A DNA stretch of 64,000 nucleotides from Macrostomum lignano (taxonomy: Eukaryota). The stretch is taken from NCBI GenBank assembly GCA_002269645.1, contig NIVC01000694.1, positions 248,001-312,000 of the forward strand, written 5' to 3'. Below are positions 26,448 through 51,700 of the stretch, in pieces; positions within the stretch are counted from its first letter, which is position 1, and the number at the start of each line of letters is the position of its first letter. Both the position numbers and the translations under genes were made by a program. The notes under the pieces are model-generated. The model made no database searches and was not told the origin of the DNA. It worked only from the letters and a program-made list of their open reading frames with translations.

Positions 26448-28129
26448 TCAGTCCGAGTCCCAGGCACCGGGCGAGTCGCTGTCTTCGGACTCATCGGAGT
26501 CCGCCTTGACCATGTGCGGCCGGATGCTGGTGATGGCGTCGAAGATGGCCTGGACGTCGCAAGCGCCGGAAGAAATTTTCTTCTTTGCGGCCGTCTTGCC
26601 AGTCTGGACGGCCGCCTTCTTCAGCTGGATGCCCTGGCGGATCTGCTCCAGCAGGCCGCTGGTGGACCCGGCATCTGGCTGCCTCTGCTGCTGCTCCTTG
26701 CTGACCGGCTTGAGCCGCGCCGAGGTCAGCGAGGCAGCTGTCGGCGCTCCGCCGCTCCCTGAAGGCGGCCCCGCAGCGCCAGCCGCGCCAGATGGAGGTG
26801 GCGGTGGCGGAGGCGGCGGAGGCGGCGGTGGCGATGGTGGGGGCGCTCCGGTCGTTGCCGGAGCTCTCGGCGCCGCTTGCTGCGCTGGAGGCGACGGCGG
26901 TGATTGCGGCGAGGTCACGGCAGCCGCTCTCGGTCCTGGTGTTCGCGGTACCGGAGGCGGCGGCGGCGGCGGCGGCGGCGGAGGGCATGGAGCCTGGCCA
27001 CCGACCGGCGGAGGCGGCGGAGGCGGAGGTGGCGGCGGTGGAGGCGGCGGCATTCCATTGCCACCACCAGCTGCTGAAATTAGCGGCTGCGGCGCCGGTG
27101 GCGGTGGCGGCGGCGGAGGCGACGGAGGCGGCAGACACTCCCCGCCAAGTCCTCCTGACTGCAACGGCGCCGGCGGCGCTGGCGGCGGCGGCGGCGGTGG
27201 CGGTGGTGGCGACGGACTGCCGCGCAGTCCCCCGTCCGAAACCTCCGCCATTAGCGGCGGCGGCGGCGGAGGCGGCAGAGTGGCGGCCCCCTGGCCCAGC
27301 AGGTCTAGGTACTCGCCTTCCTCCTTCTCCACCGCCTCAGCCTCCTCCCAGTGCCGAGGCTGAGTCACGGGCACGGAGACGGTCGGAGCAGCCGCGGCGC
27401 TGCTGGGGGCATCCTTGGTGACGAGGTCCAGGTACTCGTCCTCGCTGGTCGGCTCCGGCGCCTCGATGGCCGGCTGCGAGCTCTGGACGGGCGCGAACTC
27501 CACGCCGTGCTTCATGGCCTCGTAGTTCGGCTTCGCCACTTGGCGCGGCTTCTTGCGCTTCTTCCGGCTCTGCCGTTTGCCGCCCCGGCCAGCGGCGCCC
27601 GCCCCCTCCGGCCGCTGCTTGGCCAACTTGGCCGCCTGGTCCAGCATCTGCTGCGCCCACAGCCGGAAGAAGAACTCGGGGTCTGAGTACAGACTCATGC
27701 CTTTGCGGTCATCGTCGCGCAGTTGGTCCAGGCCGTCTAGCGCGGGCGCGGGCTCGGCGGCGGCCCGCAGGCTGCGCACGGAGTCTGGCTGGGCGCTGGG
27801 CGTCAGCAGGCCCTGCTCCGTGGCCTGGCGGGAGGCGAAGGTCTCCGGCCGGTCGATGGGGGCGGGTCCTGGTCCCGCACCAGCCGCTCCACCCGGGAGC
27901 CGAGGCGCTCCGCTTTGCTCGCGAGCTTTCGGGTTCGCCCCACCAGCTGCTGCATTTCGCTGGCCAGGCCGCTGAAGATGCCGCTGGCCTGGGCGCTGAT
28001 GCAGCTCATCTGGCTGAGCAGGTTGCTCAGTGTCACATTGTTGGTTAATGTGAGGTCCTGCGACTTGGGCAGCGGGTCGCTGGTTTGGGTCACGGCCACC
28101 GGCTGCACCACTCGCTGCGGAAACGGCAT
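26448..28129 (-). CDS. WASF: WAVE/SCAR-family Arp2/3 nucleation-promoting factor (WHD, basic region, polyproline, WCA); one apparent frameshift at a G5 run (27858-27862)
   Basis: N-terminal WHD (MPFPQRVVQP..NVTLSNLLSQMS..S..A..IF..L..E; LDQLRDDDRKGMSLYSDPEFFFRLWAQQML), basic RKKRKK, long poly-Pro, WH2 GLLEQIRQGIQLKK, C segment DVQAIF.AI..IR, acidic SDESEDSD..WD. One extra C in CCGCCCCCATC would join the two frames. Confidence 0.88.
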
Positions 28130-28593
28130 TTTGCTTGGCGCTTTCTCAGAGCGATAGGCGGCTGCAGCTGCGAGCGGGCTTTGTAGGCAGGCGGGGCGGG
28201 GGAGTGGGGTGGCTGCCCGGGGGGGCTGTGAGGCAGTACCTTGTTGATGCTGTTTTGTCCGAGTGCGCACGTTGGCTGCACTCCTGCCCTGCACACTGGC
28301 GCAGCAGTGAAAATGCCTTGCAGAGTGGCTGCGGCTGCGTGCGCCCCCTCTCCACTGGCATATCCTGTGTTTTGCGCAGAGTTTATCTGCAGCCCGCCAT
28401 CTGCCTGCCTGCAGGACCTGTGCAGCCTTCCTGAGGCTGTAAGTGGAACAAGAGGCTATACATGCCTCTGGCTGACATTAACTGGGCCTGCTGTGAAACT
28501 TTAGCATCTTGTTATAGAGGCTTCTAAGAGCACCAGTCCACTTGACCGTGGGAGCGTGACCGCCTACCTCTCTTCTTCTGGTCAGCTGAAAGT

Positions 28594-28872: not shown

Positions 28873-29774
28873 TGCAGCAAGCCTTAGATTAACAAGTACA
28901 TCAAGTTATTAATTTATTTCGTTTTCACTTGCCGAGCTCGTGTGTGAAATGCCCACTTCAGGGTCTGCAGAGTCCTGTTGAGAAAATTTCCCGGCTTCTG
29001 CATTCCAGCAGTGCTCGGTTTTAAGCTCTAATATTAATACCATAGGCTTAAAACGCGTGCCTCGCTACTTACTTCGTGTCAAGTCAGTAGTATAAAGCTG
29101 GCATTCTAGTACTTCTTTACTGCTAAATAAATTCGAGCTGGGTAAAAAGAGGAATGCAAGGGCACGAGGCTGACTCTGCCAGAGCAGCGAAGCCTGGGGA
29201 GCCTGCAGAGGCTCTTTGTCTTTTCATACGCTTTTCAGGGCGTGCGTTTGTTGAAAGCGGGTTTCAGGCAACTCCGAGTTCGCATGCCTCATCGCTACGG
29301 CTGCCCAGCCTCCTCGATCCACATTTTGCATGAGAATTAATTAAGAAAACTTTGCCTCACCTACCAAGAATACGAGAAAGGGGATCCCGGCTCTTCTGCT
29401 TCGTTCCTATTCTGAGCCAGAAATGGCAGTTTCTGGGGACCGGGCGGTCCCGAACTCGCTTGCCTGTGAATTATGAAGCCCGAGCCAGCGAGTTGGATCT
29501 GCGGTCTCGGGAGCCGCCGAACGCAGTCGCCGAGCCGGAGGTCGGGACGTGACTTCCCGCTGTCCCCCGCTGAGCAGGAAGTGTTCCCGGGGAGAGGGGA
29601 GCAGGATGGAGACGCAGTGGCTATGGGAGGCTGACTGCCTTTTAGAGAGTTGATTGGAGAGCGAAGGCTGCGCGAATTTCAATGCTCGCTTTTGAGAGCC
29701 AAGACGCTTTGGTGGCGAAGGCGATCCGGGCTTTGAAAATTCATTTGAGCAATCTGGACACGGCCACTGAAGCT

Positions 29775-31080
29775 GAGGGAGAGAGGGGGGAGAATTGGGA
29801 GATGGGGAAAGCTAGAGAGGAAGGAGTGACAGGGAGAGAAAGGAAGGAGAAAAATGGGAGGAGAGGAAGACAGGAGAGAAAGGGTGGGAGGAAAAGAGGG
29901 GAGAGAAGAGAGGGGTGAAAAAGGGAAAGAGAGAAGTAGAGGGAGAGAAAGAGAGTTGAGAGAAAGGAGAGGAGAGAGAAAGGGACAGGGAGGAGTAGAG
30001 TGGGGGAGGCAGATTGGGGGGAGAGGGGAAGACTGAGTGGGGAGAGTGGAGAGGGGGAGGCAGAGTGGGAGGGAGAAGGGAAGAAGTAGAGGCTGAGTAT
30101 GAGGGAGAAGTGGAGAGGGGGAGGCTGAGTGGGAGGGAGAAGTGGAGAAGTAGAGGCTGATTGGGAGGGATAGGGAGAGGGGGGCTGAGTGGGAGGGAGA
30201 AGTGGAGAGGGGGAGGCTGAGTGGGAGGGAGAAGTGGAGAGGAGGCAGAGTGGGAGGGAGAAGTGGAGAGGGGAGGCTGAGTGGGAGGGAGAAGTGGAGA
30301 GTGGAGGCTGAGTGGGAGGGAGAAGTGGAGAGTGGAGGCTGAGTGGGAGGGAGAAGTGGAGAGGGGGAGGCAAATTGGGGGAGAAGTGGAGAGGGGGAGG
30401 CTGAGTGGGAGGGAGAAGGGGAGAGTGGAGGCTGAGTGGGAGGGAGAAGTGGAGAGGGGGAGGCAAATTGGGGGGAGAAGTGGAGAGGGGGAGGCAAATT
30501 GGAGGGAGAAGGGGAGAGGGGGAGGCAAATTGGAGGGAGAAGGGGAGAGGGGGAGGCAAATTGGAGGGAGAAGGGGAGAGGGGGAGGCAAATTGGAGGGA
30601 GAAGTGGAGAGGGGGAGGCAAATTGGAGGGAGAAGTGGAGAGGGGGAGGCAAATTGGAGGGAGAAGGGGAGAGGGGGAGGCAAATTGGAGGGAGAAGTGG
30701 AGAGGGGGAGGCAAATTGGAGGGAGAAGGGGAGAGGGGGAGGCAAATTGGAGGGAGAAGTGGAGAGGGGGAGGCAAATTGGAGGGAGAAGTGGAGAGGGG
30801 GAGGCAAATTGGAGGGAGAAGGGGAGAGGGGGAGGCAAATTGGAGGGAGAAGTGGAGAGGGGGAGGCAAATTGGAGGGAGAAGTGGAGAGGGGGAGGCAA
30901 ATTGGAGGGAGAAGGGGAGAGGGGGAGGCAAATTGGAGGGAGAAGTGGAGAGGGGGAGGCTGAGTGGGAGGGAGAAGTGGAGAGAAGGAGGCTGAGTGGG
31001 AGGGAGAAGTAAATAGTGGAGGCTGAGTGGGAGGGAGAAGGGGAGAGGGGGAGGCTTATGGGAGGGAGAGGGGAGGTAGG
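29775..31080 (+). repeat. Purine-rich (G/A) tract with a 31-bp core unit (GGAGGGAGAAGTGGAGAGGGGGAGGCAAATT)
   Basis: About 1.3 kb that is almost all purine on the + strand; tandem units read directly. Confidence 0.93.
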
Positions 31081-31650
31081 TGAATGCTATCAAAGAGAAT
31101 TGGGATAAATTCAGAGGGAGTAAGCAAAGGAGGCGCAGATGAGGTGGGCAGATGAGGGCTGGGCAGGCAGGCAGCGGCTGTGGCAGTAAATTAAAACGCT
31201 CTGGCCTGACAGCACGGGGGCTGATCCGGAGACATTCGAAGCAGATTAAAAAGCCAATAAAAGCCGAGTCTGAAATCCGATTCGGTTCTAAAAAACGATC
31301 GAAATTGTCTTCCGGGCGAGCGGCACGCACGGAAATCGCGTGGCGACGGCGCAGCGGGTGTTGAAGGTTGAATCCGGGCGGGTCGGCCGGGGCGGGGCTG
31401 GGGATTCGGCGAGGCGCCCTCGGCCTATGGGACCGGCTGGCTGTCCGCATGGGATATGCATGCATGGCATACTCAGCCGCTGCCCTCCCCGAGGTCTCAG
31501 TCTAATCCCATTCGAGCAGTTGCTTTTGGCAAAGCACTGTCTGAGAACAGCTTCATCTCAGCCAAGGCGTCTCACTGCTGACTCTGGGCGGAGGCATGAG
31601 GCATCCATACCGGCTGAGCAGCTCCCGCAGCACCTGCTGATGCCACAGTC

Positions 31651-34600
31651 ATGAGCACTCGGCTCCGCTGCTCGCAGTCCGCCTTCTTCAATCGGGCCTT
31701 TGAGCTCAGCCACATTGAGGAGGGTGAGCTGGGACAGTCCCTGCGGCAGAGCGGGGTGAACTGCAATAAGGAGCGGGGGGTCACTCGAGTAGGGAACGGG
31801 AAGTCACTCGAGCAGGGAGCGGGAAGTCAACCGAGCAGGAAGCGGCAAGTCACTCGAGCAGGGAGCGGGAAGTCACTCGAGTAGGGAGCGGGAGGTCACA
31901 CCCAAGCAGGGAGCGGGAAGTCACACCCAAGCAGGGAGCGGGAAGTCACACCCAAGCAGGGAGCGGGAAGTCAATCGAGTAGGGAGCGGGAAGTCACACC
32001 CAAGCAGGGAGCGGGAAGTCACACCCAAGCAGGGAGCGGGAAGTCAGTCGAGTAGGGAGCGGGAAGTCACACCCAAGCAGGGAGCGGGAAGTCACACCCA
32101 AGCAGGGAGCGGGAAGTCAGTCGAGTAGGGAGCGGGAAGTCACACCCAAGCAGGGAGCGGGAAGTCACACCCAAGCAGGGAGCGGGAAGTCAGTCGAGTA
32201 GGGAGCGGGAAGTCACACCCAAGCAGGGAGCGGGAAGTCAGTCGAGTAGGGAGCGGGAAGTCACACCCAAGCAGGGAGCGGGAAGTCAGTCGAGTAGGGA
32301 GCGGGAAGTCACACCCAAGCAGGGAGCGGGAAGTCAGTCGAGTAGGGAGCGGGAAGTCACACCCAAGCAGGGAGCGGGAAGTCAGTCGAGTAGGGAGCGG
32401 GAAGTCACACCCAAGCAGGGAGCGGGAAGTCAGTCGAGTAGGGAGCGGGAAGTCACACCCAAGCAGGGAGCGGGAAGTCAGTCGAGTAGGGAGCGGGAAG
32501 TCACACCCAAGCAGGGAGCGGGAAGTCAGTCGAGTAGGGAGCGGGAAGTCACACCCAAGCAGGGAGCGGGAAGTCACACCCGAGCAGGGAGCGGGAAGTC
32601 ACACCCAAGCAGGGAGCGGGAAGTCACACCCAAGCAGGGAGCGGGAAGTCACACCCGAGCAGGGAGCGGGGCGTCACCCGAGCAGCCCGAGCCGGTCAAG
32701 GAAGAGCAGAGCAGCGGCGGTCAGGCTGAATGCGTCAACAGGAAAAAAAGATTGAATCAGCCAGCCGCATCTGACAGAGGCAGCCACTCAGACAGGCATG
32801 CAGAGACCTGCAGGCGCAGAATTCCATGCAAATTCAATTCTCGGCACCCTTGGCTTCCCTGCTCCGGCAGCAGAGCCGGGGTGAGGGCAGAGCCGCGGGT
32901 GAGGTGGAACTGCAGGATTTCAAAGTACAGAAGCAATGCACTTTTACAAAGTGCGGCGGCTCTGAGCTCCGCTCGGTGAGCGCAAAACTCGACTTCCCGC
33001 TGAGTCGAGTTTTGAGTCGATTGGAATCTGCAGCCAAGGAGCCAGTCGGGTGGTCTTCAGCACATCCAGTTGCTTTATTTTATCTGCTAATTAGCATTGA
33101 GCCAGAGAGGGTTTGTGGTTTAAGAGGCATTAGCATGTCTGCTGTTACATGTATGGTATAGAATCTATAGGGATGCAACGCACGAGCTGTAACCACTATT
33201 CAGCTCCAGCCTTCAATTCTCATCCCCAACCTTCAATTCTCATCTCCAGCCTTCAATTCTCATCTCTAGCCTTCAATTCTCATCTCCAGCCTTCAATTTT
33301 CATCTCCAGCCTTCACTTCTCATCTCCAGCCTTCACTTCTCATCTCCAGCCTTCACTTCTCATCTCCAGCCTTCACTTCTCATCTCCAGCCTTCAGTTCT
33401 CATCTCCAGCCTTCAATTTTCATCTCCAGCCTTCAATTCTCATCTCCAGCCTTCAATTCTCATCTCTAGCCTTCAATTCTCATCTCCAGCCTTCAATTTT
33501 CATCTCCAGCCTTCAACTCTCATCTCCAGCCTTCACTTCTCATCTCTAGTCTTCAATTCTCATTTCCAGCCTTCAATTCTCATCTCCAGCCTTCAATTTT
33601 CATCTCCAGCCTTCACTTCTCACCTCCAGCCTTCAGTTCTCATCTCCAGCATTCCCTTCTCTCAACCCGCAGAAACCCACTGCCTAGTCGGCACCGACTG
33701 CGATGCCAGCCTTCAGCCAACCGCCGCTGCAGCCGCCGCTGCTGCCGCAGCCCTCGGAACGAGCTCAGAGCCCGCGGCGGACTCCGTCTTGTCGCGAAGC
33801 CCCAGCGACCTGCTGCAGGTGGAACTCCGCAGCGCTGACCGGCGCCGCCGCTCCCAGCAGTCGATGGGCGGCGGCAGCGGCGGCGGCGGCGGTGTGCAGC
33901 TGTCGGTGCCTCCGCCTGCCGGTCCGCTGCAGCAGCGCGGCAGCTTCTCGCAGTACTCTGGCCGCTCCGCCCGCTCCTCCATCGCCTCGGACCCCGGAAT
34001 CCTCATGATGGACGTCCACCAGCCCGCGCACGCGCTGGACCCGAAGTACCTGTACCACGCCTTCGTCTGCTACCACGCCTCGGACAGGCAGTGGGCGCTG
34101 GGCCTCGTGAAGCGGCTGGAGGCGGAGCCCTACTGCTACCGCCTCTGCTACGACATGCGCGACTTCAACCGGACCTTCTCGCGCATCCAGAACGTCGTCT
34201 GCTCGGTGATGCTGAGCCAGCGCGTCATCCTGGTGCTCAGCGGCCAGTTCGTGGCCCACAGCTGGCCGGAGCTCGAGGATGCCCTGCAGCACGCCTGCCC
34301 GCCCGCCGGCCAGCGGAAGCGCAAAATCATCCCCGTCACCCTGGGCGACGCCCTCGAGCTGCCCGATCTCATCAAGCCGCTGACTGTGCTCAGCGCCAAC
34401 CACCGCAACTTCTTCGATCGCCTGCTGCTAACGCTCAAGCACGGTGAGTCTGCGCACTGTGCTCCAAACTTCTGTGTTTTATGGTGTTTACAAACAAGAA
34501 ATTCATTGAGAAGCTTGTCGCCTCCGCCTCTCAGAGAACATCGTGCTGTCGGATTCCTCCACGACGCTCTGGTCGGTGATGTCGCACTCCGCAGGCTCCG

Positions 34601-35748
34601 AGAACGGCCACCTGCTGGTGTTGGCCAGGGGCCGCCTCACCGGCCAGTGGGGCGCCAGGCCCGAGTTCCGCCACTCCCTGGAGCACGCCAGGCACCAGCC
34701 GTCGGTGGACCTGGTCGACTCCTTCGTGAGCCGCTCGGGACTCGGGATCCCGGACCCAGCACCTTCTCCTGCGGATCCCGGACCCAGCACCTTCTCCTGC
34801 GGATCCCGGACCCAGCACCTTCCCCTGCAGATGCCGGACCCAGCACCTTCTCCTGCAGATGCCGGACCCAGCACCTTCTCCTGCAGATGCCGGACCCAGC
34901 ACCTTCCATTGCAGATGCCGGACCCAGCACCTTCCCTTGCAGATGAAGGACCCAGCACCTTCCCCTGCAGATGAAGGACCCAGCACCTTCCCTTGCAGAT
35001 GAAGGACCCAGCACCTTCCCCTGCGGATCCCGTCTCCTTCTGTGGCTCACTGTCCCATCCTACTCCATCTCACTCTCGCCCTCCTTCATTCTCACCCGCT
35101 CTCCGTCAACTAATTCCTGTCTGTCCCATCCCACTCTCCCCGCTCAGATCCAAATCCCCAAAACTGAGGCAGAGGCGGGGAGCTGTTGCGCCACTGGCCT
35201 CTTCAGCACCGCTCGCTAAAAGCGCTCAGCTTTCTCGGAGATGGATAGATGTGGAACTGGGAGGGCAGGCGGAGAGGAGAGAGGCTGGCAAGCAGCCAGG
35301 CATCTGCGATGGCTGCTCAGTGCTGCAATGCAGCACCCGGGGCTGCCGGGGGAGACGGACAGGCGGATCCCGCATGCCCGATGCAGATCCAGCATCTCTT
35401 GCAGACAAGCCCTCTCATCTGGATGCTGGGCAGGCCGAGGCGGCAGATACTGGCTGGGGAAGGGAGTCTGGGCTGGGCCGAGTAATGGGGACAAGGAGAA
35501 AATGAAGCGAGTGAAATAGGGATGGGGATGCGGTTTATGCAATCCCCAGCCGTCCGGCAGACATTCGCCGTGCACCAGCTGAGGCCATTGGCTTCGTCAG
35601 TCCGCCATGAGGGCTGTAAATTTAATCCGCAACTAATGAGATTAAGGAGCTGCGCCGGCTGCTAAAATATTAGCACTGGATGATCAATATCTGATGCCTT
35701 GGTGACCAGCCTTGCCATCTTGTACTGTACAAGGGTTCCTGCTCAATA

Positions 35749-35798
<50 letters not shown>

Positions 35799-38700
35799 CC
35801 TGCCTGTCTGTCTGTCTGTCTGTCAGTCTGTCTGTCTGTCTGTCTGTCTCAACCAGCTCCCCGGTCCGCCACTCCACTCCAGTTCAGCACCGCGGACCTG
35901 CACGCCATGATGTCGTACATCTTCAGCGACGGTCAGCGCCTCGACTGGCGCCTCTCCCGCCTGCCCTCGCTGGCCTTCCTGGCGCTGCTGCTGCTGTGGA
36001 TTTTGGCCATCCTGGGCGCGCTGCTGCTACTGCGGAAGCCGGCCAAGTGTGAGCGCCGAGCTGAACTCAAATCATTGCGGCTCGCATTGCCATTGCTCAC
36101 ATCGCCGAGCACCCACCACCCCCTCCCGCAGACATCCAGTTCGTGCGCCTGGGGGTCTTTGTGATGCCCGCCGTCATGCTGCTGGTTGGGTACTTCATCC
36201 GCTGGCGCGCCTACAACTTTCACAAGGAGGAGGTGAGCAGCCGCAGTGAACTGCCCTGTAGGCAGCAAATCTGCCAGGAACCCGCTGGCAACAGACAAAT
36301 GCCATCAGACCGGCCTCATCAAGCCGATCGCTGCTTGGCTCTCAAATTCACTTTAGCATTCGGAAGCCCCCGCTGACCTTCCCTGAAATTAAGGGGCAGC
36401 CCAGCAGGCCGGGAGGCTGGGCGGGAAGCGGCTCCCACAGTAATTGATCCGTCATCAACTTTCCTTCGTTGGCACGGAAGCAGTTGGCTTTGCCTCAAAG
36501 ATTGGGAAGAATGAAAGGGGAGGCGGAGAGTGACTGGCGAGAAGCCTGAGCAGGCAGCTCAAACCAAAGCCAGTCTCTGCCCGCTTCATGCCTTAATCCT
36601 CTATGCTTCATCACTTGTGCCACTCCTCAGTTAAGAGCAGGCAGGGGGTGGGGAAGGCAAGTGGCAGCGCGGATGTGCTCGCGGCTCGCAGTGACCGGCA
36701 CAGAAGCTTCTCAGCTGAGCTGGGCTTTTAGCTGCATATGGAGCTTTGTGCGGGATAAACTCACCAGCCTTGCACTGCAATAAACTCACCAGCCTTGCAC
36801 TGCAATAAACTCACCAGCCTTGCACTGCAATAAACTCACCAGCCTTGCACTGCAGTGCGGGATAAACTCACCAGCCTTGCACTGCAATAAACTCACCAGC
36901 CTTGCACTGCAGTGCGGGAAAAACTCACCAACCTTACACTGCAATAAACTCACCAGCCTTGCACTGCAGTTCGGGATAAACTCACCAGCCTTGCACTGCA
37001 GTGCGGGATAAACTCACCAGCCTTGCACTGCAGTGCGGGAAAAACTCACCAACCTTACACTGCAATAAACTCACCAGCCTTGCACTGCAATAAACTCACC
37101 AGCCTTACACTGCAATAAACTCACCAGCCTTGCACTGCAGTTCGGGATAAACTCACCAGCCTTGCACTGCAGTGCGGGATCAACTCACCAGCCTTGCACT
37201 GCAATAAACTCACCAGCCTTGCACTGCAATAAACTCACCAGCCTTGCTCTGCAGTGCGGGATAAACTCACCAGCCTTGCACTGCAGTGCGGGAAAAACTC
37301 ACCAACCTTACATACACTGCAATAAACTCACCAGCCTTGCACTGCAATAAACTCACCAGCCTTACACTGCAATAAACTCACCAGCCTTGCACTGCAGTTC
37401 GGGATAAACTCACCAGCCTTGCACTGCAGTGCGGGATCAACTCACCAGCCTTGCACTGCAATAAACTCACCAGCCTTGCACTGCAATAAACTCACCAGCC
37501 TTGCTCTGCAATAAACTCACCAGCCTTGCTCTACAATAAACTCACCAGCCTTGCACTGCAATAAACTCACCAGCCTTGCACTGCAATAAACTCACCAGCC
37601 TTGCACTGCAATAAACTCACCAGCCTTACACTGCAATAAACTCACCAGCCTTACACTGCAATAAACTCACCAGCCTTGCACTGCAGTTCGGGATAAACTC
37701 ACCAGCCTTGCACTGCAGTGCGGGATCAACTCACCAGCCTTGCACTGCAATAAACTCACCAGCCTTGCACTGCAATAAACTCACCAGCCTTGCTCTGCAA
37801 TAAACTCACCAGCCTTGCTCTGCAATAAACTCACCAGCCTTGCACTGCAGTGCGGGAAAAACTCACCAACCTTACACTGCAATAAACTCACCAGCCTTGC
37901 ACTGCAGTTCGGGATAAACTCACCAGCCTTGCACTGCAGTGCGGGATAAACTCACCAGCCTTGCACTGCAGTGCGGGGATAAACTCACCAGCCTTGCTCT
38001 GCAATAAACTCACCAGCCTTGCACTGCAATAAACTCACCAGCCTTGCACTGCAATAAACTCACCAGCCTTGCACTGCAATAAACTCACCAGCCTTGCTCT
38101 GCAATAAACTCACCAGCCTTGCACTGCAGTGCGGGGATAAACTCACCAGCCTTGCTCTGCAATAAACTCACCAGCCTTGCTCTGCAGTTCGGGATAAACT
38201 CACCAGTCTTGCACTGCAGTGCAGGATAAACTGACCAGCCTTGCTCTGCAGTTCGGGATAAACTCACCAGTCTTGCACTGCAGTGCAGGATAAACTGACC
38301 AGCCTTGCTCTGCAGTTCGGGATAAGCTCACCAGCCTCACTCCGCCATCCCGCAGCTGTCAAGGCGGATTTTCATGAACACGGTGCTGTCGAACGCGCTG
38401 CTGTATGCCAGCAGGCGGCCCTTCATCGTGTCAACCTTCCACTTCAAGAAGGACGACAGCTACCAGGTGCGGGTTCGAATGCTCTTAGCCAAGCTGCGGC
38501 ACTTACCTCTGTGCAAAACTGCAAACCTATTTTTAATGCGATCCAACTGCTTTCAGGTGTTTCTGATGTACTACAATCCTGAGGAGTGCATTGTGAGTAA
38601 TGATTTTTATGATTCACTGACAAACACCAAGTTTAGCAGGGAAGCATCCAGCTGAGTAGGGAACGGCCAGCTGAGTAGGGAACGGTTAGCTGAGTAGGGA

Positions 38701-41700
38701 ACAGCCAGCTGAGTAGGGAACGGTCAGCTGAGTAGGGAACAGCCAGCTGAGTAGGGAACGGTCAGCTGAGTAGGGAACGGCCAGTTGAGTAGGGAACGGT
38801 CAGCTGAGTAGGGAACAGCCAGCTGAGTAGGGAACGGTCAGCTGAGTAGGGAACGGTCAGCTGAGTAGGGAACAGCCAGCTGAGTAGGGAACGGTCAGCT
38901 GAGTAGGGAACAGTCAGCTGAGTAGGGAACAGCCAGCTGAGTAGGGAACAGTCAGCTGAGTAGGGAACGGTCAGCTGAGTAGGGAACAGTCAGCTGAGAA
39001 GGGAACAGCCAGTTGAGTAGGGAACGGTCAGCTGAGTAGGGAACAGCCAGCTGAGTAGGGAACAGCCAGTTGAGTAGGGAACGGTCAGCTGAGTAGGGAA
39101 CAGTCAGTTAAGAAGGGAACGGCCAGTTGAGTAGGGAACAGCCAGCTGAGTAGGGAACGGTCAGCTGAGTAGGGAACGGTCAGCTGAGAAGGGAACAGCC
39201 AGTTGAGTAGGGAACGGTCAGCTGAGTAGGGAACGGTCAGCTGAGAAGGGAACAGCCAGTTGAGTAGGGAACGGTCAGCTGAGTAGGGAACAGTCAGCTG
39301 AAAAGGGAACAGCCAGTTGAGTAGGGAACGGCCAGCTGAGTAGGGAACAGCCAGCTGAGTAGGGAACGGTCTGCTGAGTAGGGAACAGTCAGCTGAGAAG
39401 GGAACGGCCAGTTGAGTAGGGGATCAGCCAGCTGAGTAGGGAACAGTCAGCTGAGTAGGTTGCGGCCAGCTGAGTAGGTTGCGGCCAGCTGAGTAGGTTG
39501 CGGCCAGCTGAGTAGGTTGCGGCCAGCTGAGTAGGTTGCGGCCAGCTCAATCATTCACCGCGCCGCCCGCAGGAACAAATTCGCCAAATTCTGCTGCGAG
39601 TGCGGCCAGCGGAGCACAGGAAGCTGGAGAGCCTGCTGGCAGTGTACACTCTGGACTCCGACTATCTTAGAGGCGTGAGTCTGCTCAGCTCGCGCACTTT
39701 TGACGATTAAAATTCTCGAGCTCACTGAGAGCACAGTCTGGTGGGAGTTCAGTCCGCGCTCAGCTCCCCGAGGGAAATCGGGGAGGGCGGCGGTATTTCC
39801 CCAGAAAATATCCTTTCGGCTCAAAGGCGGGGGGCTCCGCAGACACGGGAGACTTTGGTGGACTTTCATTTGGATTTTAAGCATGGAACGCGTGCCGATA
39901 AAGATTGCCGTTTCAATTGAATCTTGTTGGCACTTTCAAGACTTGAAGCCCAGCAGCACTGCATACTGCAGCTGGAGTCCATGAATTCAAGCACTGCATG
40001 GGTGCAGGCAGCAGCTGGAGTCCATGAATTCAAGCACTGCATGGGTGCAGGCAGCAGCTGGAGTCCATGAATTCAAGCACTGCATGGGTGCAGCAGCTGG
40101 AGTCCATGAATTCAAGCACTGCATGGGTGCAGGCAGCAGCTGGAGTCCATGAATTCAAGCACTGCATGGGTGCAGGCAGCAGCTGGAGTCCATGAATTCA
40201 AGCACTGCATGGGTGCAGGCAGCAGCTGGAGTCCATGAATTCAAGCACTGCATGGGTGCAGGCAGCAGCTGGAGTCCATGAATTCAAGCACTGCATGGGT
40301 GCAGGCAGCAGCTGGAGTCCATGAATTCAAGCACTGCATGGGTGCAGGCAGCAGCTGGAGTCCATGAATTCAAGCACTGCATGGGTGCAGGCAGCAGCTG
40401 GAGTCCATGAATTCAAGCACTGCATGGGTGCAGGCAGCAGCTGGAGTCCATGAATTCAAGCACTGCATGGGTGCAGGCAGCAGCTGGAGTCCATGAATTC
40501 AAGCACTGCATGGGTGCAGGCAGCAGCTGGAGTCCATGAATTCAAGCACTGCATGGGTGCAGGCAGCAGCTGGAGTCCATGAATTCAAGCACTGCATGGG
40601 TGCAGCAGCTGGAGTCCATGAATTCAAGCACTGCATGGGTGCAGCAGCTGGAGTCCATGAATTCAAGCACTGCATGGGTGCAGCAGCTGGAGTCCATGAA
40701 TTCAAGCACTGCATGGGTGCAGGCAGCAGCTGGAGTCCATGAATTCAAGCACCGCATGGGTGCAGGCAGCAGCTGGAGTCCATGAATTCAAGCACTGCAT
40801 GGGTGCAGCAGCTGGAGTCCATGAATTCAAGCACTGCATGGGTGCAGCAGCTGGAGTCCATGAATTCAAGCACTGCATGGGTGCAGCAGCTGGAGTCCAT
40901 GAATTCAAGCACTGCATGGGTGCAGGCAGCATCTGGAGTCCATGAATTCAAGCACTGCATGGGTGCAGCAGCTGGAGTCCATGAATTCAAGCACTGCATG
41001 GGTGCAGGCAGCAGCTGGAGTCCATGAATTCAAGCACTGCATGGGTGCAGGCAGCAGCTGGAGTCCATGAATTCAAGCACTGCATGGGTGCAGCAGCTGG
41101 AGTCCATGAATTCAAGCACTGCATGGGTGCAGGCAGCAGCTGGAGTCCATGAATTCAAGCACTGCATGGGTGCAGGCAGCAGCTGGAGTCCATGAATTCA
41201 AGCACTGCATGGGTGCAGGCAGCAGCTGGAGTCCATGAATTCAAGCACTGCATGGGTGCAGCAGCTGGAGTCCATGAATTCAAGCACTGCATGGGTGCAG
41301 GCAGCAGCTGGAGTCCATGAATTCAAGCACTGCATGGGTGCAGGCAGCAGCTGGAGTCCATGAATTCAAGCACTGCATGGGTGCAGGCAGCAGCTGGAGT
41401 CCATGAATTCAAGCACTGCATGGGTGCAGGCAGCAGCTGGAGTCCATGAATTCAAGCACTGCATGGGTGCAGCAGCTGGAGTCCATGAATTCAAGCACTG
41501 CATGGGCGCAGCAGCTGGAGTCCATGAAAATATGCAGAAATTAAGACCGCCATCCTCTGTTCTGCATCCTCTCTGTAGCTTGACATTGCTGATGATGCCG
41601 TGTCTTCTAGGTCCTTGATTTGTCTTTTTTTCATCTGCCCCAGCGTCTGTACCCAGTGTTAGATTCGTATTGAGTTTCTGGGATACCTGGTAAATTAGAT

Positions 41701-42385
41701 ACCTGGATACCAGATTAGATATCAGGATACCAGATTAGATACCTGGATACCAGATTAGATATCAGGATACCAGATTAGATACCTGGATACCAGATTAGAT
41801 ATCAGGATACCAGATTAGATATCAGGATACCAGATTAGATACCTGGATACCAGATTAGATACCAGGTTACATACCTGGTTGCTTAAACACGAAGGTCCAG
41901 AAGGTGAATTTTGGGAATTTAGCTCGTAGTGCTAGAGGAGCTGGAAGCTCCTGTCTCGCAGCGAGAACCGGCACGGCCCAACTTCTCTCCGGCAGCACCG
42001 GCTGGAGGAGCGAATCGCCGTGATGATGTGCGGCGCCTACGGCCTGGAGCTGGCCACCAAGAAGCTTCCGGCGCCGATCGAGCAGCGGCACACCCGCAAG
42101 CGGCAGTGCCTGTGCCAGTTCGTGGAGGAGTTCCTGGCGGCCTACCTGCCCATGCTGCAGCATTCGGAGTCCTTCACCGTGCAGCACATCCGGACTGTGT
42201 TCCTGCGCTACCTGAACTGCACCATCTCTCCCGACCAGGTGGTGGTTGAGACCCTCGGCCTGGGCTGCCCCAGCGATCCGGAGGCCGAAGAGCGCCAGCG
42301 ACGGCCGGGCGCGTTGCTGGAGGACAAGGTCGGCGACCCGGCCGCGGCCGAGCCGATGCCGCTGGAGCAGGAGGAGGCTGTGTGA
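31651..42385 (+). CDS. TIR-domain + TMEM268-like two-TM protein (exons 31651-31723 [tentative], 33673-34443, 34535-34725, 35883-36048, 36132-36232, 38356-38466, 38557-38592, 39573-39674, 41996-42385)
   Basis: TIR boxes YHAFVCY, RLCYDMRDF, S.RVILVLS..F....W...E, IIPV.L and FFDRL..L. Then NGHLLVLAR, two hydrophobic helices, VLSNALL, VFLMYYNPEEC and RHTRKRQCLCQFVEEFL, which track TMEM268 as I recall it (NGQVLTVLR, ANGALL, LWFVYFDLENC, RHT..PCPCQLIE). Every junction is GT..AG and phase-consistent. Confidence 0.8.
31790..32670. repeat. 23/25-bp alternating minisatellite (AG[C/T]AGGGAGCGGGAAGTCA + CACCCA/GTCG) in the TIR gene intron
   Basis: Tandem units read directly. Confidence 0.94.
33200..33652. 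repeat. 20-bp minisatellite (CATCTCCAGCCTTCAATTCT) ending at the acceptor of the TIR exon
   Basis: Tandem units read directly. Confidence 0.94.
34745..35030. repeat. ~28-bp minisatellite (GATGCCGGACCCAGCACCTTCTCCTGCA)
   Basis: Tandem units read directly. Confidence 0.9.
35748..35849. repeat. (TGTC)n microsatellite
   Basis: Read directly. Confidence 0.94.
36755..38340. repeat. 25/33-bp minisatellite (AAACTCACCAGCCTTGCACTGCA + AT / GTGCGGGAT)
   Basis: About 55 units read directly, intronic. Confidence 0.95.
38648..39545. repeat. 19-bp minisatellite (CAGCTGAGTAGGGAAC[G/A]G[T/C]) grading into an 18-bp variant
   Basis: Tandem units read directly, intronic. Confidence 0.95.
39955..41527. repeat. 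39/43-bp minisatellite (GCAGCAGCTGGAGTCCATGAATTCAAGCACTGCATGGGTGCAG), ~37 copies
   Basis: Tandem units read directly, intronic. Confidence 0.96.
41695..41868. repeat. 20-bp minisatellite (GATACCTGGATACCAGATTA)
   Basis: Tandem units read directly. Confidence 0.92.
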
Positions 42386-47593: not shown

Positions 47594-48733
47594 ATATATA
47601 TTACTTCACTTGCCAGCCACACAGTGACTAGAAAAGGGGAGAATTTAGAGAGTGCATCTCTAGGCCATAGCCCTTAAAAAGTCATATCCCCCAGCTTGGT
47701 CTAGGGTGCCAGAATTAGTCAAAAGCCTATTAGGATATCTTGCCATTTGCCTTTGGCCCTTGGCCTTGCAGCTTGAGTTGTAGCAAGCCTCCAATTGGAT
47801 GACGTGGCCAGCCAGTCCAAGTCGCTATCTATGTAGCAGGTCAGGAGGCCATACCAGGTGTGCCCTTGTGTAGAGTATGGCATTGGTCTCACTGTCTAGA
47901 CTTTTGTGCACTCTGAATACCACATAGCATGGCACATATGCAGCATCCAGCTCAATAGATTGCTCTCTAGTAGAATAATTTTTCAATACAATGATAACCA
48001 AAAATGCATAGATATTTCAACCACAGTGCATTTTGCTATCTTTTATTAAGGAATATTGGCTTTTCTTCAATACTTAATAGCATTTGTATGCTTAGCTATT
48101 CTAGGACCTAATATATCTAGTTTTTTTTCACAAGCTACAATGTTATACATTATGCTGCACTATTCCTTTCTTTCTTTTGCCACCAAAGGGGTTCATCTAA
48201 ACAGTATGGCAATTAGCCAATTGTAAAAAAGTAATACTTTCAATAGTGATATCATTTAAGTTGATCTTATAGTTTAGATAATACTTTAATTATGTGAGCA
48301 TGCCTAATTATATATTTTCCACACAAAAGCCACCTTTTTAACTATAGTCTAATTGTATAATAATTTTACATTAATTCTAGACAAGTCTTGTAGCAATCAA
48401 TTTCTATCCTTCATATTTGTAACACCCTAATTATTTGAATAAGTCATTTTAGTCAATAAAAATATGTCTATTAAGCATAGTATTATCAAGATAAAATTTG
48501 TTTAATAATTATTTTTTTAATGTTTAAAAATGATGAAACAAAAATGTATTGCAAATTTGTATGTGTATAAATTTTTATATATATTTCTTTGATGCTCAAA
48601 ACATTTATAGTGCCGTCTGTAGTAGTGCAGGCTAGTAGTGCTTTGGGTAACTATCGACTACAGAAGCTGAAAATCTCCTTTCAGATTTCTACTTGATCAA
48701 TATTCTGCCTTAAAGTTGCCTAATGTAGAAGCA

Positions 48734-51700
48734 ATGGCCTCTATAGCGGCATTTCTGGGACAGGTAGCGTCCCTAGATGGCCTGCGATTCGAGGAAAGAA
48801 TTCACTTCTATGAGCAGATCTCTACTCGACTACGAAGCAAGAATCTGCTGGAGGAATTGGCCGCAAGTTCGCTCGAAAAACGCGCCCAGTTTTGGGCCCA
48901 ATCATTGCAGCGCGTTGTGCATGTAGCCCACGAAGACTTTAATCATCTAAAGAAGGTCAGCGACCAAAAGGGACCCCAGCATTCTATTGTTGTTAGAAAG
49001 AAAAAAGCAATTCTCGATGCCATTAAAAGACTATTTGCAGCTTGTAGAACTACTGGTTGTGCTAAGAACACAGAGATTGTGTCGTTCTTTGTCACCATTC
49101 TGTCAGATTCCAGTCTGCGAGCAATGGTTGGAGAGGATTATGCTTCGTTTATTGAAGTTAGCATCTTTAGCTGCAAAGAATTTGTTTTCAGCTTATCCGA
49201 TGCGTTGCTGGAGAGCATTCACAATAGTCTAACTGACAAATTGAAAACCAAGTTTTGTTCCCAGTATCTGTCACTGTTCTCGCAGCTTGTCCTGGTGACT
49301 TCCGAACGGAGCTGTCTTTTCGCAGATGTATCAGTTCTTGCCAACTGGCTTGCTGCCACTTTTCAGCGCAAGGACGAGAGACTTTTTCAAAGAATAGTAA
49401 ATTCTGTTGATTGTCTTGTTAAGCACGAGTACTTAACGGTCTTCTTTTCTAAGACTTGTGCCTTTGCAGAAAGCCTGTTTCAGTGCTATGAACAGTTCTT
49501 CTCTTCATTTAAGACAGCAACTCATGAGGTTGTATTGTCTTTTTTTTGCCAATTCTTCAGCACTCTAGTGGCCAGAAAAGACCTGCAGGACAGCTGCAAA
49601 GAACTTGTGCAAGAGTTGCTCTTACTGCGACAGCCCTTGATACTGCTTCTAATTCGCCTACGTGAAGAAAAATTCATCCCAAGCGTCCGATTCCATCGAG
49701 CTGATAAGACTACCGACTGTCCAGTATTTTATCGACTCCTTGCTGTGTTATCAAGCTCTGATCTGGCGGCTATCTCGCAAAATCCTGCTCTTGACTCAGC
49801 GCTCCATTGCCGAAACAAACGGCAGAGATGTGCTTCTGCAATTGAAGAAGCATGCGACAGCATTGAGTCTGTTAGCGCTGATGACGTCGCAGTGATTCTT
49901 GACATTAAGTTAATTCGTGCTCTTTTTGAGTCGAAAAATGTGCCAAACACAAGCCTCAAACGTCTGCAGTCTACTCTCATTCATGTCCAGAAATATCACA
50001 AAGACGATGTGATTCTATCGTTTCTGATTAGGCTTGTGACCGACTGCTTCGAAAAATGGAATGTTCAATTTGATGAAGATTTCATGGAATCCTTCTGGAA
50101 GTTTTCCTTTAATATGATGACTCGGAAAAATTTCCGTCAGCTGTCATTTCATTTGTGTCAAGCTTTATCAGCTTCTTACTCCGGTGACTCAAACATTTCT
50201 GTCCTGAACTGGCTTTTGTGTGCTTTCGAGCTGAGCCTATCGGTAAAGCCAGTTTCCATTCAACTGAAAGAATTCTGTCACATTGCTGATGTGAGCATTG
50301 CTATTGTCAGTCGGGAGGCACCGTGTTGCAGCGACCGATATAGAAAGTGCTATTGTTTATCAGACCCGACATTAATCGAGATCTCGAAAATAGTCGAGTC
50401 TACTATTAAAGACTTCAAACCATCAAGCTTTAATGAATTTGTTGATATTACTATATCTTCTGCATTCCTTCAGTGCTGCAACTTAATTGAAAATCCGGCT
50501 ATTGTTGCCCAACACTTTCGTCCTTGCTTCGGACTTGCGAGACTCTGAGAGATAAATGCGATCTTTTTTATTTCGCAGATCAAGTAGGAGACTTTGTTAA
50601 GGTTTTCCGACCTTTAATCATAAGCGTGTTAGCGAAGCCTATTAAAGCATTTCTTCTTAACGTGAAGAAGTTGTTTTTCGATCTTTTGACTACAAATAAT
50701 TCCAGCGAACGTGACTTGTCTGTTCTAAACCTCGAAGACGAAACGGAGTTTTCGCCAACATGTGATGACACGCTATCAGCCAATGACTACACTTCAAACT
50801 GCCGCGAAGTTACAATCAACAGGCAAGAGAGACTCCGTCAATCCCTTCTAAAAGCGTATCTTCGCTTAACTTCTGAATTAGACTACGACAACTGCGATGA
50901 AGTTACAGACTCATTAAAGCTACTCGCGCAAGGCAGCTCCTCAAGTTTTTCAGCTCGCAACTCCGATCTGCACGCTTTTGCTATATTCCTAGTGAAGGAA
51001 TTCATTCAGTTTTCTTCCACTGTTGATTCGACGCAGCATTACATAAAGCTAGCATTTGATGTTTTCCGTCGTGGTTTCCGAGAGTTTCGGAAGAATCAAC
51101 CAGTTATTGTGCAGTTTTGTGATATTTTTGCTGAATTCATTGAAAAGCTGGGAAACTTTTGTCACGACAGTGTAGAGAATTATTTTAACTATTGTCAGGA
51201 GCTTCTTGTCGTTATCATGCTTTGTCAAGAAGGAATCGCGTGCAGCACCTGTCTACTGAAATCATGGTTAGAATGCACGATTCGTGTGTGTAAACTTAGA
51301 CCTAGTTTACTTTCAAGACAAAAGCAAGGTACGACGATTTTTCGCTATATTCTTGAACAACTCGGACATTTTTGTGATGCGGTTGCAGCAAAAGCTGCAA
51401 ATAACGTTCGTTTTATTGACTGGAAAGACGCAGATCATGTTTCCGCTGTTTTGAACGCCATTAAAAATCTGTTTTCTATTGAAGTCACTATTGAAGATAC
51501 CCAGTTTCTAAACGATTTGAAGCGATCAAGGGTTTCAATAGTTAAGCGCGCAATGACAATCATACTTCAAAGTTCAAATGCGTCACAGCGGGGCCACAAT
51601 TTACTCTCTCTAATTCAAATGCACCAGGAAGGGTTGCTTGATTTAGAGTCCGCAAGAGACGTCATGAAGTCATCCGCTGCTAGTATTCGCGACTATGCCC

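What the first reader, a model, noticed from the sequence alone, without database searches (positions are those of the whole stretch)
31651..42385. TIR domain fused to a complete TMEM268-like membrane module
Seen in sequence: nine phase-consistent exons build a protein with an N-terminal TIR domain (boxes 1-3, with a Glu at W+4 in HSWPELE), then two TM helices and a C-terminal RHT..QCLCQFVEEF motif. Established: vertebrate TMEM268 has this TM plus RHT..C.CQ module but no TIR. Invertebrates have lineage-specific TIR fusions such as TIR-STING, and some TIRs are NADases that use the conserved Glu. Inference: this may be an undescribed innate-immune receptor or effector architecture with no LRR/Ig ectodomain, where both termini are on the same side of the membrane and TMEM268 serves as the sensing or oligomerising unit. 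The TMEM268 assignment rests on remembered motifs.
Basis: partly seen in the sequence, partly recalled or inferred. Interest (0 to 1): 0.75.

Follow-up and report, generated by a model that had tools for sequence, protein, structure and literature searches.

The report
Flatworm TIR–TMEM268 membrane adaptor gene
The window holds a real nine-exon flatworm gene that joins a Toll/interleukin-receptor (TIR) signalling domain to a two-helix TMEM268-type membrane module; worms, molluscs and ribbon worms share this conserved fusion, databases already list it, and nobody has studied its function.

Summary
Nine GT-AG exons on the + strand (31651-42385) splice in frame into a 620-aa protein. It has a TIR domain (Pfam TIR_2, E 5e-10), only two hydrophobic helices, and a C-terminal QRHTRKRQCLCQFVEEF motif.

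Exons 2-9 align end to end with RefSeq proteins of two nemerteans (39-40% identity). Seven of the eight introns match those of the Tubulanus gene: six at the same column and phase, one three columns away. The TIR|module junction also matches Capitella. The first exon and the start codon are not verified.

The window protein scores below Pfam's DUF4481 (TMEM268) cut-off: 16 bits against 25. A profile-profile comparison links the whole module to Capitella proteins that pass the cut-off (98.3% probability, E 1.8e-14).

The TIR+DUF4481 fusion is a small family in flatworm, nemerteans, annelid and molluscs. All members are called "uncharacterized", but domain annotation already lists the architecture, so it is not undescribed.

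The TIR resembles the scaffold TIRs of TLR1/2/10 and MyD88, not the enzymatic ones. The Glu at W+4 becomes Q, R or D in most relatives, so the NADase idea is weak.

My best reading is a hairpin-anchored cytosolic TIR adaptor. Its function is inferred, not shown.

The parts
31651..31723 (+). Putative coding exon 1 (ATG, 73 nt, ends in phase 1). Unverified.
   Evidence: It splices in frame to exon 2. UniProt model P0004 starts with MSTRLRC...HIEEA. Tubulanus has a 61-nt first coding exon that also ends in phase 1. There is no sequence similarity to relatives.
33751..34443 (+). Exon 2: low-complexity N-terminal region plus the whole TIR domain. Phase 1 in and phase 1 out.
   Evidence: Pfam TIR_2 and TIR hits. 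tblastn with P0005/P0006 gives E 1e-40 to 1e-43. The phase-1 intron at the TIR|module junction falls in the same alignment column in Tubulanus and Capitella.
34062..34400 (+). TIR domain core (residues 129-241). Box 1 is YHAFVCYHASD, box 2 is RDFNRTFS, box 3 is NFFDRLLL.
   Evidence: Pfam TIR_2 E 5.2e-10. Closest solved sequences are oyster TIR-STING 6wt6, TLR2 and MyD88.
34275..34277 (+). Codon GAG for Glu200, the W+4 position in HSWPELE (the candidate catalytic Glu of NADase TIRs).
   Evidence: Read from the sequence. It is E in 6 of 15 family members and Q, R or D in the rest.
34535..34725 (+). Exon 3: start of the DUF4481-like module, cytosolic (STTLWSV...NGHLLV...).
   Evidence: Colinear with the nemertean proteins. 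It equals Tubulanus exons 3+4 and Capitella exons 3+4.
35883..36048 (+). Exon 4, containing transmembrane helix 1 (about 35961-36032, residues ~346-369).
   Evidence: Hydropathy peak of 3.04 at residue 360. The orthologue model has a helix at the aligned position.
36132..36232 (+). Exon 5 (101 nt), containing transmembrane helix 2 (about 36143-36202, residues ~379-398) and the basic stretch RWRAYNFHKEE.
   Evidence: Hydropathy peak at residue 388. Same length (101 nt) and phase as Tubulanus exon 6.
38356..38466 (+). Exon 6: C-terminal cytosolic domain.
   Evidence: In frame. Its flanking introns sit at the same columns and phase in Tubulanus and Capitella.
38557..38592 (+). Exon 7: a 36-nt micro-exon (VFLMYYNPEECI) carrying the family-invariant Cys.
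   Evidence: A 36-nt exon at the same place in Tubulanus and Capitella. The Cys is invariant.
39573..39674 (+). Exon 8 (102 nt).
   Evidence: Same length and phase as Tubulanus exon 9. tblastn hit.
41996..42385 (+). Exon 9: end of the module, an acidic tail, and the stop codon TGA at 42383-42385.
   Evidence: tblastn with P0005/P0006 gives E 1e-31 at 58-61% identity. The Pfam DUF4481 partial hit lies at residues 500-535.
42083..42133 (+). Motif QRHTRKRQCLCQFVEEF (residues 521-537), the most conserved stretch of the family. It holds an invariant His and the CxC pair.
   Evidence: Identical in the nemerteans apart from K/R. H267, C273, C275 and E279 are invariant across 8 module sequences. It matches the last ~40 positions of the DUF4481 profile.

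Best explanation
The locus is the Macrostomum lignano member of a conserved spiralian gene family. Its product is a hairpin-anchored membrane protein that lies wholly on the cytosolic side apart from a loop of about 10 residues.

Domain order:
- an N-terminal TLR/MyD88-type TIR domain;
- the first, cytosolic part of a TMEM268/DUF4481 module;
- two transmembrane helices;
- a cytosolic alpha/beta domain of about 220 residues, ending in an invariant H...CxC motif.

Shown here: the gene model, the domain content, the homology of the module to DUF4481, and the age of the fusion (shared introns in flatworm, nemertean and annelid).

Inferred: the topology is N-in/C-in, because there is no signal peptide, TIR domains are cytosolic, and there are two helices.

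Inferred by analogy: the protein works as a membrane-tethered TIR adaptor. The DUF4481 module would place it in a membrane and hold the cytoplasmic tail of a partner receptor, as mouse and human TMEM268 do with integrin beta4 and CD11b. The TIR would then nucleate TIR-TIR assembly with a downstream adaptor such as MyD88. In a flatworm without TLRs, this could supply a membrane-proximal TIR.
For: - Gene model: closes in frame with GT-AG borders.
- Domains: Pfam TIR_2 and TIR pass their cut-offs.
- Colinear relatives: 39-40% identity to Lineus and Tubulanus RefSeq proteins across both the TIR and the module.
- Family size: an exhaustive HMMER search of 1.84 billion representative proteins found only 54 relatives. 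Of the 13 long members scanned, 12 have a Pfam TIR hit and the 13th is a fragmentary model. Named members come from Mollusca, Annelida and Nemertea.
- Full architecture elsewhere: Capitella P0063 carries TIR_2 plus DUF4481 over profile positions 2-293 at 79.6 bits.
- Module homology: hhalign of the flatworm/nemertean modules against the Capitella modules gives 98.3%, E 1.8e-14.
- One transcript: a single ORF spans both parts on an intronless 1892-nt assembly contig from a public sequencing run.
- Shared introns: the TIR|module junction (phase 1) and three further introns share column and phase in window, Tubulanus and Capitella. The last intron is one column off in Capitella.
- Membrane helices: only two hydrophobic peaks.
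- TIR class: the nearest solved relatives are TLR1/10/6/2, Hydra TRR-2 and MyD88 by fold (E 3e-7 to 1e-5). Enzymatic TIRs are far weaker. By sequence the nearest are oyster TIR-STING, TLR2 and MyD88.
- TMEM268 biology: human TMEM268 has two TM helices at 104-126 and 130-152. Its region 104-342 binds the integrin beta4 cytoplasmic part (PMC6748091). Tmem268 knockout mice lose CD11b and clear bacteria poorly (PMC11169502).
- TLR-less host: M. lignano has no TLRs (PMC8609888), while planarians keep MyD88 and other TIR proteins (PMC7958881).
Against: - No expression, localisation or interaction data exist for any family member.
- The window protein alone scores below Pfam's DUF4481 cut-off (16.3 against 25 bits).
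- Single-sequence HMMER from the nemertean module listed no vertebrate protein among its named hits. The link to vertebrate TMEM268 therefore runs only through the Pfam profile and the Capitella proteins.
- The BB-loop RDF motif is lost in the mollusc members, so TIR-TIR signalling may not be general.
- The module's predicted fold has no solved relative (best Foldseek E 0.7), so partner binding rests purely on analogy.
- The inter-helix loop of the window protein carries four basic residues. This fits the positive-inside rule poorly, although orthologues have neutral or acidic loops.
Confidence: 0.55

Rival explanations
1. Membrane-tethered NADase effector. On clustering through the TMEM268 module, the TIR would cleave NAD+ using Glu200, as in SARM1 or bacterial TIR-STING, causing metabolic arrest or producing a nucleotide signal.
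For: Glu is present at W+4 in the window protein, both nemerteans, the SRR21676472 contig, Babylonia and Candidula. The best solved sequence match is the oyster TIR-STING fusion.
Against: The position is Q in five mollusc genera, R in Mytilus and D in both Capitella proteins, so it is not under family-wide constraint. TLR2, a TIR not known as an NADase (my own knowledge), carries the same Glu (SEWCKYE in the alignment), so the residue does not discriminate. By fold, TLR1/10/MyD88 score E 1e-7 to 1e-5, while AbTir, BtpA and SARM1 score E of about 3e-3 or weaker.
Confidence: 0.12
2. Receptor-trafficking or adhesion regulator with no immune role. The conserved function would be that of the TMEM268 module (stabilising integrins or other membrane proteins against endolysosomal degradation). 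The TIR would be merely a generic dimerisation or interaction domain, perhaps used in development.
For: The C-terminal module motif is more conserved than the TIR: EQRHTR[KR]RQCLCQFVEEFL is identical between flatworm and nemerteans. TIR box 2 decays in molluscs. The known TMEM268 functions are integrin stabilisation (PMC6748091, PMC11169502). Toll-family TIR proteins also act in development (PMC8609888).
Against: The TIR is retained in nearly every full-length family member across four phyla, which argues that it is functional. In mice, loss of Tmem268 itself impairs defence against bacteria (PMC11169502).
Confidence: 0.25
3. Gene-model artefact. Under this reading a TIR-only gene and a separate TMEM268-like gene lie next to each other and were joined by eye.
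For: There are no transcript data for this window. The M. lignano database models P0002 and P0004 stop after exon 5 by reading into the intron.
Against: The same fusion appears in RefSeq models of nemerteans, molluscs and an annelid. One intronless contig carries both parts in one ORF. The junction is a split codon (phase 1) at the identical column in three phyla. No stop or start separates the parts. P0001-P0003 also join the TIR to the TM exons.
Confidence: 0.03

Closest known systems
TMEM268 (C9orf91; Pfam DUF4481, PF14800) of vertebrates
   Same: Both have a two-helix hairpin with a short loop, a cytosolic region before it and a larger cytosolic domain after it. Both end in the R-H...C-L-C-Q motif that matches the end of the DUF4481 profile. 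Family relatives cover profile positions 2-293.
   Different: Human TMEM268 is 342-343 aa, with DUF4481 at 38-328 and no TIR (PMC6748091). The window protein carries about 255 extra N-terminal residues, including a TIR. It scores below the Pfam cut-off, and its named single-sequence HMMER hits are all spiralian.
Spiralian 'uncharacterized' TIR+DUF4481 proteins. Examples: Capitella teleta CAPTEDRAFT_224550 and CAPTEDRAFT_228275 (R7URB0), Lineus longissimus LOC135487228, Tubulanus polymorphus LOC141899026, Babylonia LOC143294818, Saccostrea LOC134252490.
   Same: Same domain order, colinear alignment and shared intron positions and phases. The window gene is the flatworm member of this family.
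   Different: It has a longer low-complexity N-terminus and an acidic C-terminal tail, a basic inter-helix loop, one intron fewer than Tubulanus, and a minisatellite in most introns.
Membrane TIR proteins without an LRR ectodomain (Hydra HyTRR-1/2; 'TIR-only TLR-like' proteins)
   Same: Both have a TIR of the TLR class at a membrane with no sensing ectodomain. Hydra TRR-2 TIR is among the best structural matches (TM 0.85 on the target). Such proteins are thought to pair with separate sensor proteins (PMC8609888, PMC6321704).
   Different: HyTRR is a single-pass protein with its TIR C-terminal to the helix. Here the TIR is N-terminal to a two-helix hairpin and is followed by a large conserved cytosolic domain.
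Metazoan TIR-STING (Crassostrea gigas, PDB 6wt6/6wt7)
   Same: It is a lineage-restricted invertebrate fusion of an N-terminal TIR to a second signalling module, and it is the best solved sequence match to the window TIR (E 1.4e-06).
   Different: There is no STING domain here (no Pfam hit), and the partner module is DUF4481.

Membership tests
TIR domain (Pfam PF13676 TIR_2 / PF01582 TIR) | Profile score above the curated gathering cut-off | tested here: met
   TIR_2 scores 40.3 bits (cut-off 28) and TIR scores 26.5 bits (cut-off 21.3), at residues 129-241.
TIR domain (Pfam PF13676 TIR_2 / PF01582 TIR) | Boxes 1-3 and a flavodoxin-like fold matching solved TIRs | tested here: met
   The boxes are readable. 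The fold was tested on the 39%-identical orthologue P0005, not on the window protein itself: Foldseek hits TLR1/10/6/2 and MyD88 at E 3e-7 to 1e-5.
Enzymatic (NADase) TIRs such as SARM1, AbTir and plant TIRs | Catalytic Glu at the W+4 position of the alphaC region | tested here: inconclusive
   The window protein has Glu200. The position is E in 6 of 15 family members and Q, R or D in the other 9. TLR2, not known as an NADase (my own knowledge), also has the Glu (alignment).
Enzymatic (NADase) TIRs such as SARM1, AbTir and plant TIRs | NAD+ cleavage activity | not testable with these tools
   This needs a biochemical assay.
TMEM268 / DUF4481 (PF14800) | Profile score above the curated gathering cut-off (25 bits) | tested here: not met
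   The window protein scores 16.3 bits (E 0.0064), and only over profile positions 256-293. The nemertean orthologues score 16.7-23.5 bits.
TMEM268 / DUF4481 (PF14800) | Homology of the whole module to proteins that do pass the profile | tested here: met
   Capitella P0063 scores 79.6 bits over profile 2-293 and P0037 scores 79.2 bits. hhalign of window+nemertean modules against the Capitella modules gives 98.3%, E 1.8e-14, 255 columns.
TMEM268 / DUF4481 (PF14800) | Two adjacent transmembrane helices in the first third of the module, and a C-terminal RH..CLCQ motif | tested here: met
   Two hydropathy peaks at residues 360 and 388. The motif is at residues 521-537. Human helices are at 104-126 and 130-152 (PMC6748091).
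TMEM268 / DUF4481 (PF14800) | Binding and stabilisation of integrin subunits | not testable with these tools
   Known only for human and mouse TMEM268 (PMC6748091, PMC11169502).
Toll-like receptors | LRR ectodomain, a single TM helix, and a C-terminal TIR | tested here: not met
   There is no LRR hit and no signal peptide, and the TIR is N-terminal to a two-helix hairpin.
TIR-STING | A STING cyclic-dinucleotide-binding domain after the TIR | tested here: not met
   Pfam returned no STING-family hit at E<=0.1.

The most novel reading that the evidence does not exclude
TIR-TMEM268 is the ancestral form of TMEM268. On this reading it is an integrin- or receptor-tail-bound membrane adaptor that feeds directly into TIR/MyD88 signalling. 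In TLR-less flatworms it would be a principal membrane-proximal TIR nucleator. The anti-bacterial role of vertebrate TMEM268, and the stronger TLR signalling its authors propose (without direct support) in knockout mice, would be remnants of that link after loss of the TIR. The invariant Cys...His...CxC set could form a metal or redox site that gates the adaptor.
Probability: 0.15. Interest if true: 0.75.

Novelty: new member of a known kind. Interest (0 to 1): 0.5.

Why it matters
Flatworms have no Toll-like receptors, yet they keep MyD88 and other TIR proteins, and how they start TIR signalling at membranes is an open question. This gene is a well-conserved candidate: a membrane-anchored TIR protein.

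It also ties TMEM268, a poorly understood vertebrate protein recently linked to integrin stability and bacterial clearance, to the TIR world through an old fusion shared by at least four spiralian phyla. That gives a concrete hypothesis for what the DUF4481 module does, and M. lignano is a tractable animal in which to test it.

On the practical side, the public M. lignano protein models for this locus are frameshifted, truncated and misnamed. The model given here corrects them.

Tried and rejected
1. My first exon-4 acceptor (35857) broke the frame; 35883 fixed it.
I used the module of the nemertean orthologue P0005 for that search, and P0005-led alignments for the structure predictions.
3. 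Both word-indexed searches that were capped at 8000 candidates returned only four proteins each: the full protein and the 8-sequence module profile. The profile search still added Capitella P0063. I therefore obtained no canonical vertebrate TMEM268 sequence and ran no direct profile-profile test against vertebrates.
4. Foldseek of the confident module-only model (pLDDT 81.7) against the PDB gave nothing (best E 0.7, TM <=0.17). The fold gives no clue to mechanism.
5. Literature searches for TMEM268+TIR, DUF4481 and C9orf91+TIR found no description of the fusion. The key survey (Gerdol et al. 2017, Dev Comp Immunol 70:145) is not held, so I could not check whether it classifies this family as one of its 'ecTIR-DC' groups.
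6. The exact-product look-up for the Lineus protein failed.
7. I rejected a TLR, IL-1R or TIR-STING identity because there is no LRR, Ig or STING domain.
8. I rejected a second copy or pseudogene in the window.

Full report
**What the window is.** The sequence is eukaryotic, GC-rich in its middle part and full of minisatellites. The closest proteins to the spliced product are four UniProt models of the flatworm Macrostomum lignano. They are only 43-70% identical overall because they are frameshifted or read into introns. Their unshifted segments are 95-100% identical to the window. The window is therefore M. lignano or something extremely close, and the public models of this locus are poor. 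Their names are "SEFIR domain-containing", "CKK domain-containing", "Non-specific serine/threonine protein kinase" and "Uncharacterized".

**Checking the observation.** I rebuilt the gene from the sequence. Nine exons with canonical GT-AG borders close into a 1863-nt ORF of 620 aa that ends at TGA 42383-42385. The exons are 31651-31723, 33751-34443, 34535-34725, 35883-36048, 36132-36232, 38356-38466, 38557-38592, 39573-39674 and 41996-42385. A first choice of acceptor for exon 4 (35857) broke the frame.

Pfam finds TIR_2 (E 5.2e-10, 40.3 bits) and TIR (E 6.6e-06) at residues 129-241, both above their cut-offs. Boxes 1-3 and HSWPELE, with Glu200 at W+4, are present. Hydropathy shows just two peaks, centred on residues 360 and 388. 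The motif QRHTRKRQCLCQFVEEF sits at residues 521-537.

**One gene or two?** A search with the membrane module alone found two RefSeq proteins of nemerteans: Lineus longissimus LOC135487228 (540 aa) and Tubulanus polymorphus LOC141899026 (550 aa). Both carry Pfam TIR hits and are 39% identical to the module over 97% of its length. The three-way alignment is colinear from residue ~108 to ~581 of my model, across both the TIR and the module. tblastn with these independent proteins finds exons 2-9 in order on the + strand, and nowhere else in the window.

A related protein (P0007, 579 aa) is encoded as a single ORF on an intronless 1892-nt assembly contig of run SRR21676472. That is what a transcript looks like.

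I also mapped the exons of the Tubulanus gene (61/603/60/119/172/101/108/36/102/291 nt) and of the Capitella gene CAPTEDRAFT_224550 (342/427/66/113/267/111/36/183/156 nt). The window gene is 73/693/191/166/101/111/36/102/390 nt. In a family alignment:
- the intron between the TIR exon and the module is a phase-1 split codon in the same column in all three species;
- three further introns share column and phase in all three, and the last intron is one column off in Capitella;
- the 36-nt micro-exon is conserved;
- seven of the window's eight introns have a Tubulanus counterpart: six at the same column and phase, one three columns away.

The fusion is thus one gene, and it predates the split of flatworms, nemerteans and annelids.

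Only exon 1 and the start codon stay open. Relatives have unrelated N-termini. The support for exon 1 is limited to a database model that begins with the same peptide and the short phase-1 first exon in Tubulanus. In-frame ATGs at 33864 and 34005 are alternatives.

**Is the module TMEM268?** On its own, the window protein fails Pfam's DUF4481 test: 16.3 bits against a cut-off of 25, matching only profile positions 256-293. The nemertean proteins also fall short (16.7-23.5 bits).

An exhaustive HMMER search of the nemertean module against 1.84 billion representative proteins found only 54 relatives. Of the 13 long members scanned, 12 have a Pfam TIR hit, and the 13th is a fragmentary model. The named members are from Argonauta, Octopus, Babylonia, Haliotis, Candidula, Saccostrea, Mytilus, Argopecten and Capitella. 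No named hit is a vertebrate.

Two Capitella members pass DUF4481 clearly. P0037 scores 79.2 bits and P0063 scores 79.6 bits over profile positions 2-293, next to TIR_2 at residues 128-241. Saccostrea and Mytilus members just pass (26.5 and 25.0 bits).

A profile-profile comparison of the window+nemertean modules against the Capitella modules gives 98.3% probability, E 1.8e-14, over 255 columns. It spans the N-terminal cytosolic part, both helices and the C-terminal domain.

I conclude that the whole module is a divergent DUF4481 domain. The formal Pfam criterion is not met by this protein, and I could not compare it directly with a vertebrate TMEM268 sequence.

**Is the architecture new?** No, not at database level. 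Precomputed Pfam hits already place TIR and DUF4481 on the Capitella protein. RefSeq also holds mollusc and nemertean models with a Pfam TIR hit and the same colinear module. All are called "uncharacterized" or "TIR domain-containing".

I found no paper that mentions the fusion. The one large survey of invertebrate TIR proteins (Gerdol et al. 2017) is not in the library, so I cannot say whether it lists this family among its conserved "ecTIR-DC" groups, which others cite (PMC6321704).

**What kind of TIR?**
- By sequence, the nearest solved TIRs are the oyster TIR-STING fusion, TLR2, TLR1 and MyD88 (E 1e-06 to 3e-05).
- An AlphaFold model of the nemertean orthologue (mean pLDDT 70.5, with 10-residue block means of about 59-91 across the TIR) matches TLR1, TLR10, TLR6, TLR2, Hydra TRR-2 and MyD88 at E 3e-7 to 1e-5.
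- Enzymatic TIRs (BtTir, BtpA, AbTir, SARM1) come only at E of about 3e-3 or weaker.
- The W+4 Glu is kept in the window protein, the two nemerteans, the SRR contig, Babylonia and Candidula. It is Gln in Saccostrea, Haliotis, Argonauta, Octopus and Argopecten, Arg in Mytilus, and Asp in both Capitella proteins.
- TLR2, which is not known as an NADase (my own knowledge), has the same Glu (alignment).

The NADase idea is therefore possible for the flatworm/nemertean branch, but it is not favoured.

**The module's structure.** A module-only model is confident (pLDDT 81.7, pTM 0.78). It shows a short beta-hairpin region, two long helices that form the hairpin (the second running far into the cytosol), and an alpha/beta domain. 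Foldseek finds no solved relative (best E 0.7).

Across eight divergent modules the invariant residues include one Cys in the micro-exon (ECIE), the His of RH, and the CxC pair. That set would suit a metal or redox site. This is an inference; I could not measure distances in the model.

**How it most likely works.** Shown: the domain order, the homology and the age of the fusion.

Inferred from two helices, a lack of signal peptide and the cytosolic nature of TIR domains: both the TIR and the C-terminal domain face the cytosol, and only about 10 residues are exposed on the other side. The protein cannot sense external ligands by itself.

By analogy: human TMEM268 residues 104-342 bind the cytoplasmic part of integrin beta4 and protect it from degradation (PMC6748091). 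Mouse TMEM268 does the same for CD11b, and its loss impairs bacterial clearance (PMC11169502).

I therefore favour a membrane-tethered adaptor. The DUF4481 module would hold a partner receptor's tail, and the TIR would recruit a downstream TIR adaptor. M. lignano has no TLRs (PMC8609888), while planarians keep MyD88 and other TIR proteins (PMC7958881). Such an adaptor could fill the membrane-proximal TIR role.

Rivals are an NADase effector (about 0.12), a trafficking or adhesion regulator in which the TIR is only an interaction domain (about 0.25), and a gene-model artefact (about 0.03).

**Verdict.** This is the flatworm member of a conserved, database-visible but unstudied spiralian TIR-DUF4481 family. 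It is of moderate interest: a good candidate for experiments, not a new class of system.

Noticed in passing
window 31770-32685, 33200-33654, 34746-35032, 36755-38186, 38648-39547, 39968-41528, 41694-41870: Four of the gene's eight introns each hold one minisatellite array, and introns 1 and 8 hold two each. Every array has its own unit (20, 25, 28, 25, 19, 43 and 20 nt), with 9 to 52 copies at 82-96% identity. The arrays make up most of the intron length.
   Followed up: partly
window 29679-31069: A purine-rich 31-nt minisatellite (33 copies) lies just upstream of the gene. It causes the extreme GC skew (+0.56) and long spurious ORFs on both strands.
   Followed up: no
proteins P0001-P0004 (UniProt A0A1I8FIF6, A0A1I8FQZ1, A0A1I8FG16 and one more), mapping to window 31200-39700: The public M. 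lignano protein models of this locus are frameshifted, read into introns, or stop after exon 5. Three have names unrelated to the gene (SEFIR, CKK, protein kinase). There are four such models, which fits several gene copies or haplotypes in the older assembly.
   Followed up: partly
window 48716-56751 (+): Two long abutting ORFs (610 and 2075 aa) encode a PI3K-related kinase with PI3_PI4_kinase (E 3e-52) and FATC domains; it looks like an ATM/ATR-type kinase. The region is AT-rich (38-43% GC) and almost intron-free, unlike the GC-rich, intron-laden TIR gene next to it.
   Followed up: partly
window 9219-9899 (+), 11958-12593 (+), 16035-19177 (+): Upstream neighbours are an NADH dehydrogenase 30-kDa subunit (Complex1_30kDa, E 4e-45), a Med18-like ORF, and ORFs with two Tudor domains. 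The Tudor ORFs probably belong to one multi-Tudor gene.
   Followed up: partly
window 26448-28294 (-): Proline-rich ORFs with poly-Pro runs end in a peptide resembling a WH2 motif (LLEQIRQGIQLKK). This may be a WASP/WAVE-family gene. Pfam gave no hit.
   Followed up: partly
window 6457-7578 (+) and 59929-61309 (+): Retroelement remains: a gag ORF with a zinc knuckle (Retrotrans_gag, zf-CCHC) and a reverse-transcriptase ORF (RVT_1, E 1.6e-21).
   Followed up: partly
window 38586-38588 (Cys codon of ECIE) and 42089-42115 (from the His codon to the CxC codons); alignment A3: Across eight divergent family members the invariant residues include three Cys and one His (C...H...CxC). This could be a zinc or redox site in the cytosolic C-terminal domain of DUF4481. 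I know of no report of it.
   Followed up: no
locus L002 (Tubulanus) and L003 (Capitella): A 36-nt micro-exon encoding the strand before the invariant Cys is conserved in length, position and phase in flatworm, nemertean and annelid.
   Followed up: yes
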